Assembly (NCBI RefSeq): GCF_000143415.4
Contig: NW_003314263.1
Span: 1,700,749-1,764,748, forward strand
Direction of reading: 5' to 3'
Source: Selaginella moellendorffii
Lineage: Eukaryota > Plantae > Lycopodiophyta
DNA: 64,000 nucleotides
A program made the translations under genes and the position numbers. Below the pieces are notes generated by a model, which did not search any database, was not told where the DNA came from, and saw nothing but the letters and a program-made list of their open reading frames with translations. Each line of letters begins with the position of its first letter. Positions within the stretch are counted from its first letter, which is position 1. Positions 4,097-14,296 of the stretch are shown piece by piece.

Positions 4097-4196
4097 NNNN
4101 NNNNNNNNNNNNNNNNNNNNNNNNNNNNNNNNNNNNNNNNNNNNNNNNNNNNNNNNNNNNNNNNNNNNNNNNNNNNNNNNNNNNNNNNNNNNNNNN
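4097..4196. other. Assembly gap (100 N)
   Basis: Run of N bases. Confidence 1.
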
Positions 4197-4727
4197 AGCT
4201 TGGCTGTGGATTCCTGTGATCTTACGAGATGAGCTTCGAGCAGGGTGGTAATCACGATAATGATCGAGACGCAACTACGATGCATTATGCGCTAGACAAT
4301 TGAGAAACAAGGCGGCAATGAATATAAGCATGGAATTGGAAGACATGAGAAGAAAGCGCAAGGTGTGTTGGGACGATCTTATGAATCGAGCTAAAGCTCA
4401 AGTTTAAACAATTATTCATAAAATAAGATATTCTTAGAACCTTTCACGTGTGGAGCACATGGGACTATAACAGCTTCCAAGTTTTTTTTTCTTACGATTT
4501 ACTTAAATGAGGCGCTGAGACCTTGTTCAAAGGGGACTGTAACGTCTCCAGTTCTACTACTGTCTCCCAATGGACGATCCAGCGGGAGTGGCATGGCAAG
4601 CTATGCTAAAAGGGAACTTACAAACTCAGTTGAAAAACGTAAATGTCTAGCGAAAAAATTGTAAAGAGTATCAGCAATTATAAGCTTTTGATTCCAGATG
4701 TTGCATACACTTTTCATCAAACGCAGA

Positions 4728-5331
4728 TCACTTCATCAGGTCCACGGTTTTGGGGCACATTCCAGTGCAGCTCCCAAAGCCGTTCTTTTTGCAGCAGTAG
4801 TGTTCCTTGGACGAGTCGCAGAGCTGCTGGCAGCTGCCAAATCCATTCTTGAGGCAGCAGAAATAATTAACGTTTTCCTCGCAGAACTGTTGGCATCCGA
4901 ATCCATTCTTCAGGCAGCAGTAGTATTTGATGTTGGAGTCGCACTCCTGAACACATCCAAAGCCGTTCCTCAGGCAGCAGTATGTATCTTGGAGGCCTGC
5001 AAGCATCAAAAGCGGAAAAGCAGTGGCATAATCAATGTCACAAGGACAGCTCATGATCACAACAAGGAAGATCATAACGTGATTTAAGTTACCGTGTTTC
5101 GGGGTGTTCTGGATGATAACATTGAGATCAGCAGCCTGGTTACCTTCACGAGGCCCATCGATGACGTAAGTCACATCGCTCTCCCTGCCAGTCACTAGAG
5201 CCATTCTACAGGTTAGAGAAACAATTTGCAAGAATGCGGAAGTGTTTGCACGTACGCTGAGTGTTGCGAGATGCATCCACTACGAAGAGCAGCAGGCCAA
5301 AGAGGAGGGCGGAAAGAAGAACTTTGGCCAT
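4728..5331 (-). CDS. Secreted cysteine-rich tandem-repeat peptide precursor, copy 1 (predicted exons 5331-5256, 5194-5093, 4996-4728; ~148 aa)
   Basis: Hydrophobic signal peptide MAKVLLSALLFGLLLFVVDA, two phase-1 GT-AG introns giving an open frame, and four repeats of (Y/F)CCx(K/R)NGFG(S)CxxxC. TATA-like box at 5388-5395. Paralog at 8778-9362. Confidence 0.85.
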
Positions 5332-5387
5332 TCTCCTTGAACTGAAATCAGAAATATTATGCTTGACAATACAAGGTTTTGCATCTG

Positions 5388-5449
5388 TTTATAAAGGAGG
5401 AATGCCTGCATGCATCGCGTGGGCGTCCCCATCCCCACGCGATGCATGC
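5388..5449 (-). promoter_or_regulatory. TATA box plus 16-bp palindrome carrying RY (CATGCA) motifs upstream of peptide gene 1
   Basis: TTTATAAA at 5388-5395; GCATGCATCGCGTGGG (5408-5423) and CCCACGCGATGCATGC (5434-5449). The paralog keeps CTGCATGCATC at ~9431. Confidence 0.55.
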
Positions 5450-5614
5450 TTAAGATAAATAACTAGCATATCACCCAAGAAGGGAAGACTTTATGAATGT
5501 GATTTGCTTGTATCCAATGTCGACTGACTCATTTTAAAAGCGCTCGAATATCCACCAGAATATTTCTTGTAAACCTAAAGTGGGGTTTTAGGGTTCCTCG
5601 AAGGTCTTGCAGGG

Positions 5615-8600
5615 ATGGGGAAGGCGAAGAAGGGGAAGCACCGCTTGGATCGCTTCTACTACCTCGCCAAGGAGCAGGGCTACCGCTCCCGTGCCGCATT
5701 CAAGCTCGTGCAGCTCGATCGCAAGTATGGCTTCCTCAGCTCGGCGCACTCGGTGCTGGATTTGTGCGCGGCGCCCGGGGGATGGATGCAGGTGGCCGTG
5801 GAGAAGATGCCCGTGAGGTCTGTGGTAATCGGCGTGGATCTGGTGCCGATTCGTCCCGTGAGAGGGGCGCTGTCGCTCCAGGGCGATATCACCACTCCAA
5901 AATGCGCGTCGGATATTGGGAAGATTCTCGACCAGAACGGGTTGAGGATGGTCGATGTTGTGCTCCACGATGGCTCCCCCAATGTGGGAGGTGCCTGGGC
6001 CAAAGAAGCCATGACGCAGTCGTCTCTTGTCCTGGATTCTTTGAAGTTGGCTACCAAGTTTCTGGCTCCCAAAGGAACGTTTGTCACCAAGGTACGAAGA
6101 ATTCTTCTTCTTCCTCCATTTTTGAATTTTTCCTTCTTCTCTGATTCCCAAAATTGGTTTTTCTTGCAGGTTTTTCGATCCCAAGATTATAACGCGCTGA
6201 AGTATGCATTTGAACAGGTATGTTTGTCATGGTTTTTTGAGTGATATTTCATTGCCTCTTGTATCGTTTGGTAGCTGTTTGCCAAGGTGGAAGTCACGAA
6301 ACCCATAGCAAGTCGTTCGACATCAGCTGAAATATACGTGGTTGGTCTCAAGTATCTGGCACCCGTGAAAATCGATCCGCGTAACTTGGACCCTCGCTTT
6401 TTATTTGAAGAGATTCCTCAGCCCCCAAAGGTGGGTTTTGTTATTGTAAACAAGGTGCTTGCGCTAAAGCCGAGTAAATTGTGTAGGTGATCGACGTTCT
6501 TCGTAGTAGTAAACAGAAACGTCACCGCGAGGGGTGGGTTCTCACGTCAAATAGACTCTTGGTTTTATGTTTTTTATTTTCTGCAGATACGATGACGCAA
6601 ACACTACTTTTCGTAAAGACTGCACGGCAGCAGACTTCGTCTGGTCCGAAAAACCTCTAGAGCTTCTTGGTAGCATCACGTCTATTTCGTTTGAGGATCC
6701 GAAAAGTTCGCCAATCAAAGACCACGCTGAAACAACTGACGAGGTACGTTCATATCTAATCCTCGTTTGCTTGTTTTGATTTGGAGGACTTTTTTTCTTG
6801 TAGATAAAAGCATTATGCGAAGACCTTAGAGTTCTGGGGAAGAAAGAATTCAAGCAACTTTTGAAGTAGGTTCTACTTCTCGTGGCTGTTGTCTTTCATG
6901 CTCATTTGGTTCTCTCAGGTGGTGCCTGCATGTACGAAAAGCTCTTTCGAAAACGTCAGCTTCGGAGGAAACAGAGGGTGATAAGGCTGCTGAAAAGGAT
7001 GACGACGAAAAAGAAGATGAAGACGAGGATATGCTAAAGAAAATGGAGGAGCTCAAGTCTCTAATGGATTCGAAAAGCAAGCAGGCGAAGAAGAAGGCTG
7101 CCAAGCGTAAACAGAAGGTACATATTGTTTGTCTATCTTTTGTTGTTGTGTATGTTGATGGGCCACAACACTGCAGCTAAACGCACGAAATAGAACAGGG
7201 ATGCAAGTCGATGTCTTGGGAGACACTTATGGCGAGCGGGATCTGTTCTCTTTGGGCTCAATCAAGGTTTGTTTGTCCGCTTTCTCGTCTGTGCCTAGGA
7301 GCTCATGTTGGACACTTTTCCAGGCGAAGAAAAGCTTGGATCGGGTGGAAGATGCGGATGACGACATGTTGGACAGCGATGACAATGTGAAGGATGAAAC
7401 GAGTAAGCAGGACATGGAGCGGAAGGATGACGAAGACAATGATGTGGATTCTGACGTCGAGCGCGAAAGGTAAGAACTACGCCTTGAAGTGTTAACGTAA
7501 TCTCTCGCAGATACAACGACGAGCTGGAATCTTTCCTCGATCGTGCATACGAACGCTACCGGAGCAAGACTGAAAGCAACACTGCACGGCGGAAACGCGC
7601 AAGAATGGCTAACGCAGGAGACGAAAAGCTGTGGGAGGTAAGCCAAATGAAAGTGCTAGAACTTGCAAGCAGCTGACAATATCCTTAGGAGGACGTGGAA
7701 GAGAATGCTTCTGAGGAAGAAGAAAACGAAGTAGAAGAAGAGGAGGAGGAGGAGGCCAATCCTCTGGTCGTGTCGCTTCCCAAGGCCAAGCTCTCGAAGG
7801 AACAGATTGCACAGCAATGGTTCAGTCAAGACATCTTCGCCGGTTTAGATCAAACCCCGGAGACGGATACCAACAAGGACAAGACTGCCAAGGACGCTCC
7901 TCCGAGCGATGTCACGGTTGCGCCAGGAAAGCTCAAGAGAGCACGGGAAGACTTTGAGGTTGTAGCAGCCGAGCCGAGTGGTTCGTCCGACTCTTCCTCG
8001 GACGAAGAGGAGGACTACGACAGCGACGCCAAGGCAGAGATCCTCACTTACGCCAAGAAGATGCTGCGGAAGAAGGACAGAGACAGGATCATCGACGACG
8101 CCTACAACAAGTACATGTTCGACGACGAGGGGCTCCCGGAATGGTTCGCGGACGACGAGAAGCGGCACTGCAAGATTCAGAAGCCATTCACCAAGGAAGA
8201 GGTCCAGGCGATGAGGGCGCAGTTTAGAGCGATAGACGCCAGGCCCGTGAAGAAGGTTGCTGAGGCCAAGGCTCGCAAGAAGCGGAGGGTGATGAAGAAA
8301 ATGGAGCAAGCACGAAGCAGAGCGGCGGCGATTGCCGATCAGCCGGACATCTCGAACAAGTCCAAGAACAGGATGATGGACAAGGTTTACAAGAAAGCGG
8401 CGGCGACGACCAATAAGCGTCCCAAGCGGGAGCTCGTTGTGGCGAAGAAGGGCGTGAGGGTCAAGGGTGGCAAAGGGAAGCTTGTGGTGGATCGTCGCAT
8501 GAAGAAGGACTCACGATCCCGAGGAAGTGGCAAGCCTGGCAAAGGCGGTGGAAAAGGTGGTAAGACGGGTGGCAAAGGTGCGAGCAAAGGCAAACGTGGC

Positions 8601-8672
8601 AAGCCTGCGAACAGAGGCAAAGGTGGCAAGCCTGCGAGCAAAGGCAATGGTGGCGCCAAGCCCAGAAGATGA
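5615..8672 (+). CDS. SPB1: SPB1/FTSJ3-like pre-rRNA 2'-O-methyltransferase (multi-exon)
   Basis: [52 protein letters not shown], and Spb1 C-terminal motifs ([37 protein letters not shown]). Short GT-AG introns; telo-box-like TAGGGTT just upstream. Confidence 0.95.
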
Positions 8673-8777
8673 TTATATTGTTTTACACTGATGGCAAATG
8701 GTGTTTTGTTAAAGTGAAAGGTTGTCACAGAAGCAATTTATTCTTTGAATGCATTCACACATGTTCATCAAGCAAAA

Positions 8778-9362
8778 TCACATCAGATTCACCGTTTTGG
8801 GGCACAGTCCAACGCAGGAACCAGAAACGTTCGTCTTGCAGCAGTAGTGTTTCTTGGACAAGTCGCACAGCTGCAAACAGCTGCGAAATGCATTCTTGAG
8901 GCAGCAGAAGTAATTGACTTTGGGGTCGCAGAGTTGCAGGCAGCTGCCGACTCCATTCTTGAGGCAGCAGTAGTCCGACTCGCACTCCTGAAGACATGAT
9001 CCGAAACCATCCTTCAGGCAGCAGTATGTATCTTGGAGGCCTACAGCATTAACGAACGGAGAAACCGTGGCGCATAATCAAAAGCTCCTGATCATACCGT
9101 GCTTCCAGGGAGCTGCTGGGTGACAACGTTGTTGAGACCAGGGCCAGCCTCGCTGCCTTCACGACGTCCCTCGACAATGACATTGTAATTCTCACTGGTG
9201 CTCTCCTTGTCAACCGCTACACATGGATTCCACAGATTAGGGAGCAAGAATCTTGAAATTGCAATGCAGAAGTTCGCACGTACGCTGAGTGTTGCGAGAT
9301 GCATCGGCTGCCAAGAGCAGCAGGCCGAAGAGGAGGGAGGAAAGAACAAGCAATTTCGCCAT
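8778..9362 (-). pseudogene. Cysteine-rich tandem-repeat peptide precursor, copy 2 (exons 9362-9284, 9216-9098, 9040-8778); apparent frameshift at end of exon 2
   Basis: Same signal peptide and intron layout as copy 1. Exon 3 encodes LQDTYCCLKDGFGSCLQECESDYCCLKNGVGSCLQLCDPKVNYFCCLKNAFRSCLQLCDLSKKHYCCKTNVSGSCVGLCPKTVNLM. Exon 2 ends in phase 0 but exon 3 needs phase 1. Confidence 0.7.
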
Positions 9363-9760
9363 TGAACTGAAACTTTAGAGCTACAATTTCAAGCTTGCAT
9401 CTGTTTATATGCGCTGCTGCTGGGCAACGCCTGCATGCATCTCGTAATTAGCTACTATTTAGAAATGAAGGGAATGTCACTACTAGGATGATGGAAATCT
9501 ACGCTGAATGAAACTTGTTAGTATGGCCTTATCCATCCATTGCAGTGACAATTTGCAGGACCAGAGTTAAAGTATCCTGGAGAGCAACAACCTGATATTG
9601 AATGGAAAAGCCTGCACAGAGAAGTACGGGAAAACTGGCATCCCTATTGGCCCGCTAACAGAGAGAGATATTTTGATTACTTAGAGGTTTAAATTAATTA
9701 CACAGTAAAGTAGTCCCTTGAATATTCTAGCTCCACTTTTTGACGACCTTAGGGATAAAA

Positions 9761-11783
9761 ATGGCGAGGAGCTGCGCGCACTTGCTCCTGGCAGCGATTG
9801 CCGTCCTGATTCAGGTAAACGCAAAGGAATGGCGAACAGGAACTCATCACCATCATCGCATGCAATCGCCGAGAAGAGGAGCCGCGCTGCCGCTTGCCTT
9901 GAAAGAAGGCTTCGCCTACACGGAGCACTACTTCCAGCAGACGCTGGATCACTTCAATGTGGGGAATATAACGCTCTTTCCCCAGCGCTATCTCCTGCAC
10001 AATGCCTCGTGGAGTGGAGGTGCCAGTGGAGCTCCCATCTTCGTCTACTGTGGTAACGAGGGCGACATTGTGTGGTTTGCCGAGAACACTGGGTTTATGT
10101 TTGATATTGCTCCTCTCTTTGGAGCACTGCTCGTCTTCCCCGAGGTTGGTTTTTATTCTTTCTCGTTCTTCTTTCCTTCGATCAATCTCTCTCTCTCTCT
10201 CTCTCTCTTTTTCTGTGATTGTAGCACCGATTCTATGGAAAATCCCAGCCTTTTGGAGGCCAAAACGGTCCCAAGGAACTCGCATTTTGCTCTGCCGAGC
10301 AAGCTCTGGCCGATTTCGCGACGCTCATACTTGATCTCAAGAGGAATCTCTCGGCGCAAGCATCGCCAGTGGTGGTCTTTGGCGGTTCTTATGGTGGAAG
10401 TAAGGTGGTTTCAATGAGATTTTCTTTGGAGGTTCTCATAAGCTTTTTTCAGTGTTGGCTGCGTGGTTTCGGCTGAAGTATCCACACATTGCGATCGGAG
10501 CTCTCGCGTCGTCAGCACCAATACTACAGTTCGAGAACATTGTTCCATACACTACGTTCTATGACATCGTCTCGAACGCTTTCAAGGTTGGCATTGAAAG
10601 TTTTTCCGGGTTTTTGTAAGTGTTTTATCTCAGAGGGAGGGGGAGAAGTGCTTCGAGATCATACGCAATTCATGGACAGCAATCACGGAAGCTGCTGAAC
10701 AGCAGAACGGGCTTCGCAATCTCAGCCAAGATTTTCATATGTGCAGGTAAGTAAATTTACCATTGTTTTCCATCTAGGAAAAACCAAAAAATCTTTTTGT
10801 TCTTGTAGCGATTTCAAAAACGCGGATGAGTTGATAAACTGGCTAGAGTCTGCGTACTCGTACCTCGCCATGGCCAACTATCCATATGCAGCTAATTTTA
10901 CAATGCCACTTCCTGCGCATCCCGTTCGAAAGGTTTGCAAAACGAAAAAAAGAGTAAAAGAAGCCCTCTAAACTCATGTCTATTTCAGGTCTGCCAGGCA
11001 ATGGTGAACTCTCCCGTGGCGTCAAGCATTCTTCAAAGAATATACGCGGGAGTGAATGTTTACTACAACTTTACAGGGGCCGCAAAATGCTTTGATCTTG
11101 ACGATGATCCGCATGGTTTAAGCGGGTGGAACTGGCAGGTTTTTTCTTCTTTTTGTTTCCTTGTCAGATATAACTAGTCGTCTCTTCAGTCTTGCACCGA
11201 GATGGTTATGCCAATGAGCTCCAATTCCAATACAAGTATGTATCCTCCATTCGAGTGGGATGGCGAGGCCTGGAGCAGGTTTTGCTGGGAAAATTATGGT
11301 GCAATACCTCGGCCGAGCTGGGTGACAACGGAGTTTGGAGGCCATGTAAGTAAGACTTTTGTTTTTCGGTTAGCTGAATTGCATGCACCACTACAGGATA
11401 TCAAGTCTGTGTTGAGAAACTTTGGAAGCAACATTGTCTTCTCGAATGGCTTGCTGGATCCTTGGAGCGGTGGAAGGCAAGCCATGAATGATTCTTTTCG
11501 TTTGTGTAGCTCACTCATCGATTTTGGTGGTGTGCAGTGTTCTGGAGAGCATATCGAGCACAATACTGGCGTTTGTCACGAAAGAAGGTAGAAACAAAAG
11601 CTTTTCTCACGCTTCCGGCTGCTCAGATGAAATGGAAAACGTGTTTCTTCAGGAGCCCATCACCTTGATTTTCGGTGGAGTAGAAAAGACGACCCGCAAT
11701 GGCTCATTGAGCAGCGGGAGTCGGAAGTGAGGGAAATCAAACGCTGGCTGAGTGAGTACCATCAAAACGTCTTTGTCATTTGA
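9761..11783 (+). CDS. PRCP: Lysosomal Pro-X carboxypeptidase-like serine peptidase (family S28), multi-exon
   Basis: Signal peptide; [27 protein letters not shown], catalytic GGSYGG (10381), [26 protein letters not shown]. Confidence 0.93.
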
Positions 11784-12134
11784 TAAACTGATACATAAAC
11801 TGGAACTCGGATGATTAACTAAAACTATTTAATTATTAACTATTTGAAAGTGTGTATATATAAAATTTCTTTTACTTGGCATGGTGTAAAAATAGAATAC
11901 AAAAATGTGCATATTTAACTATAGTTTATACACACAACAAAAATTTTCTTGAGCGATACACATCCTTTAGATTCCAAAATAAATAATTCGTAATTAGTAA
12001 TCTAAATATGCATGTAAAAGGTCGGATTCGTAAGTTGCGAATCTACTAATCCCATTACATTCAATAATTTGTTGACGTAATGAGATCATCGACAAAAGCT
12101 TTAGCTTATTAATTACCTAGGCACACTCAATTCT

Positions 12135-13691
12135 TCACATTTTTCCTCGGTTGGCACTATCGGCCTCTTCGGAGGTCTTCTCGACCGCTTTCCCGCCGCC
12201 ACCCACAACGGCGCCCTTGAGCGAGAAGGCCGCGTGACTCACAGCCTCGCCCACCGACTCGAGCAGTCCCTTGCCGTGCTCTCCGGCCTCTCCCGCTTTG
12301 GCCTTCATCGCCTCTTTGTGCTCCTCGGCTTTGCTCCTCGCCTCCTCCGCGCTGATTCCAGTGCGCTCCTTGAATGCCTCGGCGCTCTCTCCGGCGCGCT
12401 GGCTCAAGCTCTCGGACCTCTCCCCAGATCCAGCTTCCCCCGTCATGCCCGTTCTTTTCTTGAATTCCTCGACGCTCTCGCCGGCTCGCTGCTTGAGCTC
12501 CTCGGTCCGAGACCCCGTCTTCTCCTTTGCTTCTTCAACAGTCATGCCCGTCCGCCTCTTGAAATCCTCGGTGCTCTCCCCAGTTCGCTGCTTGAGCTCC
12601 TCCCCCTTCTGTTTCGCGGCTTCCACAGTCGACTCAGCCGACTCCTTAGCAGACTCGGCGGTCTCCTTGGTTTTCTCGGACGCAAGCCCCAACTTCTCGG
12701 AGAAAGCCTGGGTGATGTTTCCAATCGCTCCAAACAAGCCTTCCTTGGCTCCTCCAGCAGTCTCACTAGCTCGATCGGTACTGAGGGAAAAAGACAGCGT
12801 CAGGAAAAGAGAGGAGAAAACTAGGACAAACTTTAGAAAACAAACCTTTGTTGAGTAGTGCCTTTCGCACTATCTGCGCTCTGGCCAACCGTATCCTGAG
12901 AAATACAAAAGAAAGCAAGCTCGCTCAATACGAAACAATAGAAAGAATACAAAACAACATACCTTCGTCGCGTCTTGAGCACGGGCAGCCTTCTCGGCAG
13001 TGACATCCTTTGCTCGAGCAGCCGAATCATAGGTGGAATCTTTCGCCTGGCCAGCCTTCTCGGCAGTGACATCCTTTGCTCGGGCAGCCGAATCATATGT
13101 GGTATCTTTCGCCTGGCCAGCCTTCTCGGCAGTGACATCCTTTGCTCGGGCAGCCGAATCATATGTGGTATCTTTCGCCTGGCCAGCCTTCTCGGCAGCA
13201 ACATCCTTGGCTCGAGCAGCCGTATCATAGGTGGAATCTTTCGCCTGGGCAGCCTTCTCAGCAGCGACATCCTTGGCTCGAACGCTGCTATCATAAACCG
13301 AATCCTTCGTCTGCCCAGCCTTCTCGAGAGTAGTATCTTTCGCTCGAGCAGCCGTATCATAAGTGGTATCCTTCGCCTGGCCAGCCTTCTCAGCCGCGGT
13401 ATCCTTCGCTCGGACAGCCGAATCATAGGCAGAATCCTTTACCTGGCCAGCCTTCTCAGCCGTGACATCCTTGGCTCGCTCCACCGTGTCCTGCGCCGAT
13501 TTGAAGGCCGAGTAGGCGGATTCCTGTACGGCCTCGCGGTAATGCGATAGCGCCTCGCTGATCGACTGCCCCGCCGTCTGCGTCGCCGTCGCCCCGTGCT
13601 CCCTCTTCTCCATGGCGCGCTCGGCGCTCGCGCGCGCCTCCTCGGCGGGGCTCGCGCGCTGCTCCTGCTGCTGATTCTTGCCCGACTCCAT
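12135..13691 (-). CDS. Group 3 LEA (late embryogenesis abundant) protein, 3 exons
   Basis: Hydrophilic A/K/E/D/T-rich protein with tandem 11-mer/22-mer repeats (AKDVTAEKAGQ AKDTTYDSAAR). GT-AG introns at ~12962-12897 and ~12846-12781 join the ORFs. Confidence 0.9.
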
Positions 13692-13883
13692 CGCACTAGA
13701 TCAAAATCTGGGAAATGTGGGAGATTCTACGCACCGCCGCTATGGATCGATCAAGAAATCCTAGAAATCTCACCGCAAACAAAACAGCTGACCCTAAATG
13801 CAGTCGTGGTGCTCGCTCAAACGAACTGGAAATATATGGAAGCATAAGCGCCGCCAAGGCGAGGGACAAATGGAGTGATCGCA

Positions 13884-13926
13884 GGGCGACGCGTGGCGCC
13901 ATGCAGTGACTGGGCGACGCGTGGCG
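13884..13926 (-). promoter_or_regulatory. Duplicated ABRE/CE3-like element flanking an RY motif in the LEA promoter
   Basis: GGGCGACGCGTGGCG at 13884-13898 and 13912-13926 with CATGCA between them, ~200 bp upstream of the LEA ATG. Confidence 0.6.
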
Positions 13927-14296
13927 AGAATACTCTCGAAGGGCGCCAGCATAGCATGCCATGAAGAAAAAGAATCTAGGGCTTCCGTGGCTATGCCGCA
14001 GGGCAAGGATAAAGGGCAAAAAAGTTGAGATGGACACGATGACCTTTTCTAGGACAGTGTCAAAATTTCTTTTTTCACTCCAGCGCAATGTTCTCTATCA
14101 GAGCAATGCTACTGCAACCTCGATCACCGACTTGATCCTCAATCACCGCTTTGATCGGTGGCTTCATTAGGGACTCGTACTGGGCAGATTTTCGTGAATC
14201 TCCGTAAGAAGGATTCTTGTTACCTACAGAATCCTCTCGTTCAAGTAACTGTTGAGGAAGATCCCAAGGAATATCAAACCTGTTTCACATTTACGG

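What the first reader, a model, noticed from the sequence alone, without database searches (positions are those of the whole stretch)
4728..5331. Multi-core disulfide peptide precursor: Ib-AMP-like or AEP-cyclised RiPP candidate
Seen: signal peptide, pro-region, then four tandem units YCCLRNGFG-CVQEC, YCCLKNGFG-CQQFC, FCCLKNGFGSCQQLC and YCCKKNGFGSCTGMC (CC-x6/7-C-x3-C) with short D/E/N-rich linkers. Established: Impatiens Ib-AMPs (CC-x8-C-x3-C) are cut from such a multipeptide precursor; alpha-conotoxins share the CC-C-C framework; asparaginyl endopeptidase ligases recognise Asx-small-hydrophobic sites (N/D-GL) in cyclotide and PawS1 precursors. Inference, two registers: (a) four linear 2-disulfide peptides, favoured because no Cys is left over; (b) cleavage at the invariant N|GF giving three G...N units such as GFGCVQECDSNIKYYCCLKN, suited to head-to-tail cyclisation. 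The paralog varies this site as DGF, NGV, NAF, NVS, always keeping Asx. I do not recognise this as a described family.
Basis: partly seen in the sequence, partly recalled or inferred. Interest (0 to 1): 0.78.

Follow-up and report, generated by a model that had tools for sequence, protein, structure and literature searches.

The report
Spikemoss secreted four-module cysteine-rich protein
This is a real, spliced and apparently strongly expressed gene of the spikemoss Selaginella moellendorffii for a small secreted protein with four back-to-back 20-residue, four-cysteine modules. It belongs to an uncharacterised family found only in this species, and nothing yet shows that it is cut into mini-peptides.

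Summary
A three-exon gene on the minus strand (ATG 5331, stop 4728) encodes a signal peptide, a roughly 40-residue region predicted disordered, and four tandem CC-x6/7-C-x3-C units. Both introns are confirmed by spliced transcript contigs from several studies. A public mis-fused S. moellendorffii model starts with exactly this protein.

The family has at least 16 protein clusters, all from S. moellendorffii, with 3 or 4 units each. It matches nothing in Pfam, in PDB sequences or in fold libraries, and no paper names it. This scan has already met the same family on other DNA of this genome.

The family is undescribed, and the Cys framework resembles Ib-AMPs. But the spacers are 4-7 residues, against 16-35 in Ib-AMP. 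The units are near-neutral rather than basic, and no conserved protease site separates them. AlphaFold gives a continuous chain of four beta-hairpins.

The near-invariant Asn sits in an N-x-x-G hairpin turn. In paralogs that turn also reads NPF, NKF and TGF, which fits a structural turn better than an AEP site.

My estimates:
- intact secreted multi-module protein, about 0.5;
- linear multi-peptide precursor, about 0.28;
- AEP-cyclised peptides, about 0.04.

The window paralog (9362-8778) carries a frame-disrupting one-base loss.

The parts
5256..5331 (-). Exon 1: start codon 5331-5329, signal peptide (n-region MAK, hydrophobic core, V-D-A|S cleavage motif), ends in codon phase 1
   Evidence: joint 5194->5256 in contigs of X1, X5, X7; identical N-terminus in P0007; AF2 helix 3-15 in the close copy P0001
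5195..5255 (-). Intron 1, 61 nt, GTACGT...CTCTAG
5093..5194 (-). Exon 2: mildly acidic pro-region, predicted disordered
   Evidence: pLDDT 25-35 for the equivalent residues of P0001; shortened in P0002 and missing in P0008
4997..5092 (-). Intron 2, 96 nt, GTAACT...TTGCAG
   Evidence: joint 4995->5092 (cut +1) in X1, X5, X7, X18
4728..4996 (-). Exon 3: four-module cysteine-rich domain, short C-terminal tail, stop TGA 4730-4728
4941..4979 (-). Unit 1, CC-x6-C-x3-C
4881..4919 (-). Unit 2, CC-x6-C-x3-C
4818..4859 (-). Unit 3, CC-x7-C-x3-C
4755..4796 (-). Unit 4, CC-x7-C-x3-C
4644..4727 (-). 3' UTR, as far as the longest transcript contig reaches
   Evidence: X5 record 9 spans 4644-4995
5332..5350 (-). 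5' UTR; the 550-nt X5 contig implies a transcript start near 5350
   Evidence: the first 95 letters of record 9 lie before the 5194 joint
5388..5416 (-). Core promoter: TATAAA at 5393-5388 and the conserved block GATGCATGCAGGC at 5416-5404
   Evidence: the block is kept in five paralog promoters, in two of them with C for T
8778..9362 (-). Paralog 2 (public model SELMODRAFT_404301): exon 1 9362-9284, exon 2 9216-9098, exon 3 9040-8778. Four units, about 70% identical in exon 3. Exon 2 is one base short, so the canonical splice is out of frame

Best explanation
The gene encodes a secreted small protein of a Selaginella moellendorffii-specific family. Shown: it is transcribed and spliced as modelled. 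It has a signal peptide, a region predicted disordered, and four 20-21-residue units that each carry CC and C-x3-C. The family has 3- and 4-unit members in tandemly duplicated clusters and no detectable relatives elsewhere. Inferred: after signal-peptide removal, each unit folds as a beta-hairpin whose turn is the conserved N-x-x-G. Each unit closes its own two disulfides, because the first and last units have the same Cys pattern as the inner ones. The four units most likely stay joined as one disulfide-braced chain of hairpins, possibly after loss of the disordered pro-region. It would work outside the cell as an abundant defence or stress protein, perhaps through its exposed aromatic residues. 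The function itself is untested.
For: Gene model and expression: spliced contigs cover both introns. The contigs for this gene have k-mer depths about 8 to 300 times those of the adjacent Spb1 gene in X7, X5 and X1. This is a rough measure. Identity: the first 100 residues of P0007 (SELMODRAFT_438189) equal this protein across both splice junctions. Family limits: 16 clusters, all S. moellendorffii. An exhaustive HMM search of 1.84 billion representatives gave 4 true clusters, all from this species. No known family or fold. Structure: AF2 gives eight strands forming four hairpins. pLDDT is 77 for exon 3 alone and 78-93 for the repeat domain of P0001, with the pro-region at 25-35. Spacers between the last Cys of one unit and the next CC are only 4-7 residues. 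Parts of them (D/E after the Cys, Y two residues before CC) are conserved and fall inside predicted strands. Units have net charge 0 to +2 and the domain has pI 7.5. Older paralog pairs show dN/dS of 0.2-0.27, so the protein is under constraint. There is a precedent for unprocessed tandem Cys-rich modules: lepidopteran X-tox (PMC2728511).
Against: No protein-level data exist, so intact versus processed is not decided. In each AF2 run only 1 or 2 of the 5 models were confident, and the alignments were shallow (8 and 16 sequences from one species). A regular hairpin does not place CC directly opposite C-x3-C, so the real unit fold may differ from the model. A disordered pro-region, variable module number and very high transcript level are also typical of multi-peptide precursors. 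Recent duplicates show excess non-synonymous change (1.5 syn / 9.5 nonsyn; 1 / 18), as in diversifying peptide families, though the numbers are small.
Confidence: 0.5

Rival explanations
1. Linear multi-core precursor. The chain is cut in the short spacers and releases four two-disulfide peptides of about 14-20 residues, as Ib-AMPs are released from their precursor.
For: It has the same CC...C-x3-C framework as Ib-AMPs, whose disulfides are C1-C3 and C2-C4 (PMC4695807, PMC10136942). Each unit has its own even set of 4 Cys with no end effects. Copy number varies between 3 and 4. The pro-region is predicted disordered. Transcript depth is very high. Recent copies carry an excess of non-synonymous changes, mostly in the C-x3-C loop and the spacers.
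Against: Spacers are 4-7 residues against 16-35 in Ib-AMP. They contain no shared dibasic or Asx-flanked cleavage motif (DSNIKY, EENVNY, DSSKEH). Units are near-neutral rather than +4/+5. AF2 runs strands through the spacer ends. There is no homology to any processed family.
Confidence: 0.28
2. AEP-cyclised RiPP. Cleavage and ligation at N|GF give head-to-tail cyclic 20-mers made of the second half of one unit and the first half of the next.
For: In this gene all four sites read N-G-F (Asx, small, hydrophobic). Asn or Asp occupies this position in 63 of 64 family units (after removing three chance CC matches in the non-family tail of the mis-fused P0015 and the start of P0019). The three inner fragments would each be 20-21 residues with 4 Cys.
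Against: Paralogs have NPF, NPL, NKF, NKI, NFQ, NVS and TGF at the site. From my own knowledge, Pro at P1' is not accepted by AEP ligases. N-x-x-G with Pro tolerated at the second place is a standard type-I beta-turn signature, and AF2 puts the hairpin turn exactly there. Register (b) leaves two end fragments with 2 Cys each in every protein. If the disulfides are intra-unit, the cut pieces would stay linked. There is no Pfam hit to cyclotide or any other family.
Confidence: 0.04
3. Granulin-like hairpin stack. The modules are derived from, or fold like, a granulin domain, with disulfides laddering between neighbouring hairpins, so the whole domain is one inseparable fold.
For: UniRef automatically names sister members (P0008, P0009, P0013, P0017, P0021, P0022) 'Granulins domain-containing protein'. 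The predicted architecture is stacked or serial beta-hairpins with CC pairs.
Against: The Pfam scans returned no granulin hit at a reporting limit of E <= 10, for this protein or for the labelled ones, although HMMER's filters drop most matches above about 0.1. No granulin chain appears in PDB sequence or fold searches. From my own knowledge, granulins end in single Cys at both ends of the ladder. Here the end units are the same as the inner ones.
Confidence: 0.1

Closest known systems
Ib-AMP precursor of Impatiens balsamina (Tailor et al. 1997, as summarised in PMC10136942 and PMC4695807)
   Same: Signal peptide followed by several tandem four-Cys units with a CC and a C-x3-C motif. An aromatic/Gly-rich loop lies between them. 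It is a plant secreted product.
   Different: Ib-AMP is CC-x8-C-x3-C, with 5-6 Arg per 20-mer (+4/+5). It has six cores separated by acidic propeptides of 16-35 residues, and its release as peptides is proven. Here the spacing is x6/x7, net charge is 0 to +2, spacers are 4-7 residues, release is unproven and no sequence homology is detectable.
X-tox 'defensin rosary' of Lepidoptera (PMC2728511)
   Same: A lineage-specific secreted protein made of tandem cysteine-rich modules that look like a reservoir of peptides.
   Different: X-tox modules are defensin-like (6 Cys) and it is an animal protein. It was shown experimentally not to be processed into defensins. No such experiment exists here.
Granulin domain (Pfam PF00396), including the C-terminal granulin of plant RD21-type proteases
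   Same: Small disulfide-rich beta-hairpin repeats with CC pairs. Sister proteins carry an automatic 'Granulins domain' label.
   Different: There is no Pfam, PDB-sequence or fold match. The Cys spacing differs and is strictly periodic with no end effects.
Multi-core AEP-processed precursors (cyclotides such as Oak2/Oak4, PawS1; PMC11253845)
   Same: Tandem cores in one secreted precursor, with Asn followed by a small then a hydrophobic residue in this gene.
   Different: The Asn lies inside the unit at a hairpin turn, not at a core boundary. The site is not kept as an AEP-compatible motif in paralogs. There is no cystine knot, no conserved N-terminal repeat or tail, and no homology.
Elongated disulfide-ladder modules such as TNF-receptor cysteine-rich domains
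   Same: The only (non-significant) Foldseek rows for the better model are TNFR-type and HER2 Cys-rich repeats. These are rod-like chains of small disulfide-braced hairpin modules.
   Different: E-values are above 5 and TM scores below 0.25. This is an analogy of shape only.

Membership tests
Ib-AMP family | Cys framework CC-x8-C-x3-C | tested here: not met
   Units are CC-x6-C-x3-C or CC-x7-C-x3-C. The framework definition is from PMC10136942.
Ib-AMP family | Highly basic 20-residue peptides (5-6 Arg, net +4/+5) | tested here: not met
   Units have net charge 0, +1, +1 and +2. The domain has pI 7.5.
Ib-AMP family | Cores separated by acidic propeptides of 16-35 residues | tested here: not met
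   There are 4-7 residues between the last Cys of one unit and the next CC.
Ib-AMP family | Proteolytic release of the individual peptides | not testable with these tools
   This needs peptidomics or a western blot.
Ib-AMP family | Disulfides C1-C3 and C2-C4 within one unit | not testable with these tools
Intra-unit pairing is inferred only from the absence of end effects.
AEP-cyclised plant peptides (cyclotide / PawS type) | Asx at the core's C-terminus followed by a small then a hydrophobic residue, conserved across family members | tested here: inconclusive
   The site is N-G-F in all four units here. Asn or Asp occupies it in 63 of 64 family units, but the next residues include P, K, F and V, and one unit has Thr in place of Asx.
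AEP-cyclised plant peptides (cyclotide / PawS type) | Each excised core carries a complete, even set of Cys with nothing left over | tested here: not met
   Cutting at N|G leaves a 10-residue and a 17-residue end piece with 2 Cys each.
AEP-cyclised plant peptides (cyclotide / PawS type) | Sequence membership (any Pfam family, cyclotide included) | tested here: not met
   No Pfam family was reported at a limit of E <= 10 apart from one chance row, ORF45 at E 6.7.
Granulin (PF00396) | Match to the granulin profile or the 12-Cys motif | tested here: not met
   No Pfam hit for exon 3, P0001, P0003 or the UniRef-labelled P0008, P0009, P0013. No granulin appeared in the PDB sequence searches.
Granulin (PF00396) | Granulin fold (stack of hairpins with an inter-hairpin disulfide ladder) | tested here: inconclusive
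   Hairpins are predicted, but no granulin structure is among the fold matches. Disulfide pairing was not readable.
Selaginella CC-x6/7-C-x3-C hairpin-repeat family (uncharacterised; named here and by earlier notes of this scan) | Signal peptide, optional pro-region, 3-4 units Y-CC-x-K-N-G-[FY]-G-(x)-C-x3-C, C-terminal C-P-K tail | tested here: met
   Alignments A1, A3 and A4 show CC, G, C, C, Y-CC, N and C-x3-C-P-K as invariant. E-values run from 1e-20 to 1e-69.

The most novel reading that the evidence does not exclude
The protein is a true multi-core precursor. After secretion or vacuolar sorting, it is cut into three or four separate two-disulfide mini-peptides of about 15-20 residues. These would be linear and convergent on Ib-AMPs or, much less likely, AEP-cyclised. 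That would make it the first multi-core cysteine-rich peptide precursor family described in a lycophyte.
Probability: 0.3. Interest if true: 0.72.

Novelty: new variant of a known kind. Interest (0 to 1): 0.45.

Why it matters
Plant cysteine-rich peptide families are known almost entirely from seed plants. This is an abundant-looking, tandemly expanding, species-restricted family in a lycophyte, with a minimal four-Cys module and no relatives. It is a clean case of lineage-specific invention of secreted defence-type proteins. If the modules are released, or can be made alone, they would be a new 14-20-residue two-disulfide scaffold. If they stay joined, the family is a plant counterpart of unprocessed 'rosary' proteins. 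It would then be a warning against reading every tandem Cys module as a RiPP core. One mass-spectrometry experiment on available plant material can test either outcome.

Tried and rejected
- Pfam at a reporting limit of E <= 10 on exons 2 and 3, on the paralog and on seven family proteins gave nothing but a chance row. NCBIfam gave one chance row.
- PDB sequence searches with a profile and with single proteins gave nothing. The only row was a non-significant local match of Y-Y-C-x3-N-G-F-G to the Ig-domain F-G hairpins of FcRL5.
- Fold searches of both models found no usable match. The ESM Atlas search by features gave no usable hit.
- Two profile hits outside the plant were rejected. P0010 is a Cys-free repeat protein of Heterosigma akashiwo virus 01. 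P0011 is a bacterial repeat protein that shares only K-N-S-Y-G-C.
- I first modelled intron 1 with donor AC|GTGCAA and acceptor TGTAG|A. The contig joints reject this and support C|GTACGT with CTCTAG|TG.
- The joint 5194->9284 in X1 would splice paralog 2's exon 1 to gene 1's exon 2. I rejected it as evidence, because the 22 letters on the short side are identical in both first exons.
- An RY/B3-type reading of the promoter block was dropped, because two of five paralogs have C for T in the core.
- Papers: none names the locus tags, and none describes a Selaginella family of this kind. The Selaginella 'thionins' of PMC8279376 are ordinary class-1 thionins and possibly contaminants, so they are unrelated. 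PMC5385957 (Selaginella BBIs) is not held.
- The three exons were never joined. Searches were run exon by exon by reference, and full-length questions were answered with the database proteins P0007 and P0001.

Full report
**What is there.**
- Exon 1 (5331-5256) reads as a typical signal peptide with a V-D-A|S cleavage motif.
- Exon 2 (5194-5093) gives a mildly acidic stretch of about 34 residues.
- Exon 3 (4996-4728) gives 88 residues holding four units, CC-x6-C-x3-C twice and CC-x7-C-x3-C twice. There are 16 Cys, all inside the units, then a short C-P-K-T-V-D-L-M-K tail.

My first hand-made model of intron 1 was wrong. The transcript contigs corrected it. Logan contigs from four runs, carrying two organism labels, were laid on window:4600-9500.
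- They skip 5195-5255 (61 nt) in X1, X5 and X7.
- They skip 4997-5092 (96 nt) in all four runs. Both introns have GT..AG ends on the gene's strand.
- One 550-nt contig (X5) runs from about 5350 to 4644. This fits a TATAAA box at 5393-5388.
- The same contigs splice the ten short introns (41-78 nt) of the neighbouring Spb1/FtsJ3 gene, so these runs are RNA although they are not labelled as such.
- Contig k-mer depth for this gene is about 8 (X7), 60 (X5) and 300 (X1) times that of Spb1 in the same run. This is a rough measure, but it points to a very abundant mRNA.

The repeat is not a chance pattern. TRF finds the 60-nt period. A six-frame regex scan of the whole window finds the Cys pattern only in this gene and in one paralog.

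They were searched one by one by reference. Where a full-length chain was needed I used database proteins.

**Whose gene it is.** The exon-3 peptide hits six proteins of Selaginella moellendorffii, all on scaffold GL377567.1, at 70-91% identity. The exhaustive profile search returned P0007 (SELMODRAFT_438189). This is a 610-residue mis-fused public model whose first 100 residues equal this gene's product across both splice junctions. So the organism is S. moellendorffii, and the junctions have independent support.

**The family.** A profile search of the 5.8-billion-protein collection gives 16 clusters, all from S. moellendorffii and on at least six scaffolds. An HMM search that reads every one of 1.84 billion representatives, with no length limit, gives four true clusters, again from this species only. 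It also gave two false hits, which I rejected: a Cys-free algal-virus repeat protein and a bacterial repeat protein.

Members have three or four units. Some lack half of the pro-region (P0002) or all of it (P0008). Invariant features are Y-CC, the Asn and Gly of the N-x-x-G loop, the two Cys of C-x3-C, and the terminal C-P-K.

No Pfam, NCBIfam, PDB-sequence, Foldseek, VIA-align or ESM Atlas match was found. No paper names the locus tags or describes such a family.

UniRef automatically labels several sister proteins 'Granulins domain-containing'. Pfam's granulin model does not match them at a reporting limit of E <= 10, so I treat the label as a lead only.

Earlier notes of this scan describe the same family at other places in this genome. 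They reached similar conclusions. I re-derived everything used here.

**Genomic setting.** A second copy lies at 9362-8778 on the same strand, with the Spb1 gene between the two copies on the other strand. A fetched locus from the same scaffold (L001) repeats the [cysteine-rich gene - Spb1] module at 94-95% identity to window 4277-14229. The module has therefore been segmentally duplicated.

Window paralog 2 is damaged. Its exon 2 is 119 nt where two sister copies have 120 nt: it has GG at 9106-9105 in place of GGG. The canonical acceptor at 9040 is therefore out of frame. The public model (P0018) uses an internal acceptor and ends up with 13 Cys. Against its nearest copy, paralog 2 shows 1 synonymous and 18 non-synonymous differences.

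**Structure.** AlphaFold2 on exon 3 with 8 aligned sequences gives eight strands forming four hairpins. Mean pLDDT is 77, but only one of five models was good. On full-length P0001 (91% identical in exon 3) with 16 sequences:
- the repeat domain reaches pLDDT 78-93;
- the signal peptide is helical;
- residues 21-63 are at 25-35, i.e. disordered.

In both models the first turn of each unit falls on N-G-F-G. The second turn falls on the 4-5 middle residues of the 'linker', whose flanking D/E and Y lie inside strands.

I could not read coordinates, so disulfide pairing is not established. In an ideal hairpin with this register, CC is not opposite C-x3-C, so the model's detail should not be trusted.

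One sequence argument does bear on pairing. The first and last units have the same four-Cys pattern as the inner ones, in both 3-unit and 4-unit proteins. A ladder of inter-unit bonds, as in granulins, would need different ends. This favours two disulfides inside each unit.

**Precursor or protein?** Ib-AMPs share the CC...C-x3-C idea, with C1-C3 and C2-C4 bonds. They are defined by CC-x8-C-x3-C, by 5-6 Arg per 20-mer, and by acidic propeptides of 16-35 residues between cores (PMC10136942, PMC4695807). Here the corresponding values are:
- spacing of x6 or x7;
- unit net charge of 0 to +2, with domain pI 7.5;
- spacers of 4-7 residues with no common cleavage motif.

These tested features are not met. 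Membership is therefore rejected, and 'works like Ib-AMP' is weakened but not excluded.

For the AEP register, I looked at the three residues after CC-x-x in the family proteins (64 units once three chance CC matches in the non-family tail of the mis-fused P0015 and the start of P0019 are set aside). Asn is there in 60 units, Asp in 3 and Thr in 1. The following residues include G, A, P, K, F, V and L (NPF, NPL, NKF, NKI, NFQ, NVS, TGF). Asn at position i, Pro tolerated at i+1 and Gly at i+3 is the classical type-I beta-turn preference; this rests on established knowledge and was not tested here. The predicted turn is exactly there. Cutting at N|G would also leave two end pieces with two Cys each. 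If the bonds are intra-unit, the pieces would stay linked as well. I therefore rate cyclisation at about 0.04.

Points that keep the linear-precursor reading alive at about 0.28:
- the self-contained units;
- the variable copy number;
- the disordered pro-region;
- the very high expression;
- the excess of non-synonymous change between recent duplicates (W1 against its nearest copy: 1.5 synonymous, 9.5 non-synonymous). This sits mostly in the C-x3-C loop and the spacers, while older pairs show dN/dS of 0.2-0.27.

A documented case where such a 'rosary' is not processed is lepidopteran X-tox (PMC2728511).

**Verdict.** It is a member of an uncharacterised, apparently species-restricted family of secreted cysteine-rich hairpin-repeat proteins.

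The most likely working form is the intact four-module chain outside the cell (0.5). A multi-peptide precursor is possible (0.28). A granulin-like single fold (0.1) and AEP-cyclised peptides (0.04) are less likely. Function is inferred only, with defence or stress the most plausible.

The family is new as a described entity but belongs to the broad, known kind of plant secreted cysteine-rich proteins. This scan has met it repeatedly, so I score interest at 0.45.

**Limits.** All relatives come from one species. Other lycophyte transcriptomes may simply be absent from the protein collections. The organ and condition of the RNA runs are coded and unknown.

Noticed in passing
window 8778-9362 (minus), especially 9098-9110: Paralog 2 (SELMODRAFT_404301) has a 119-nt exon 2 where two sister copies have 120 nt (GG at 9106-9105 for GGG). 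The canonical intron-2 acceptor is then out of frame. The public model escapes through an internal acceptor and has 13 Cys. Against its closest copy it has 1 synonymous and 18 non-synonymous changes. It is probably a decaying copy, although X1 contigs cover 8864-9191.
   Followed up: partly
window 4277-14229 and L001 (GL377567.1:714416-738950): The module [cysteine-rich gene - Spb1/FtsJ3 rRNA methyltransferase gene] is segmentally duplicated at 94-95% identity. L001 carries three cysteine-rich genes, two Spb1-type gene models between them and a third, fused FtsJ model at its end, plus an untranslatable remnant at L001 5919-6095.
   Followed up: partly
window 5388-5448 and 9395-9441 (minus): Conserved promoter blocks ATGCA[TC]GCAGGC and TATAAACAGATGCAA are shared by five paralogs whose other upstream sequence has diverged. 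Gene 1 and its closest copy also have a 16-nt perfect inverted repeat (GCATGCATCGCGTGGG / CCCACGCGATGCATGC) about 5407-5448. The RY-like core CATGCA is present in three of the five.
   Followed up: partly
L001 10001-14535; window joint 5194->9284: NCBI 'isoform X1' (P0001) joins exon 1 of one cysteine-rich gene to exons 2-3 of the next copy, across a whole Spb1 gene on the other strand. X1 contigs show the equivalent joint in the window, but the 22 letters on the short side are identical in both first exons. The joint may be a mapping ambiguity rather than long-range splicing.
   Followed up: partly
window 4836-4897: One contig of run X18 (organism B) skips exactly 60 nt (one unit) with non-splice ends. 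It is most likely a three-unit paralog or allele laid on this gene. X18 also differs from the window by several bases and two indels at 8746-8827.
   Followed up: no
window 5615-8760 (plus): This is the Spb1/FtsJ3-type rRNA methyltransferase gene. It has ten very short introns (41-78 nt), all confirmed by contigs. It has a 27-nt tandem repeat at 8568-8654 in its C-terminal coding part. Its 3' end runs into the 3' end of paralog 2 (convergent overlap around 8750-8860).
   Followed up: partly
P0007 (SELMODRAFT_438189) and P0015 (SELMODRAFT_404114): These public gene models fuse cysteine-rich genes to unrelated downstream sequence; P0007 runs on into a kinase-like region. UniRef names P0007 a 'Protein kinase domain-containing protein'. 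Both are mis-annotations.
   Followed up: no
P0010 (Heterosigma akashiwo virus 01, 854 aa): A Cys-free viral repeat protein scores E 2e-15 in ten stretches against the family profile (repeat ...V-K-H-A-F-G-A-M-I-V-S-Q-T-L...). It looks compositional, but the periodic resemblance to CC-L-K-N-A-F-G-S-C-L-Q-L is odd.
   Followed up: no
window 4097-4196: An assembly gap of 100 N lies about 0.5 kb downstream of the gene's 3' end.
   Followed up: no
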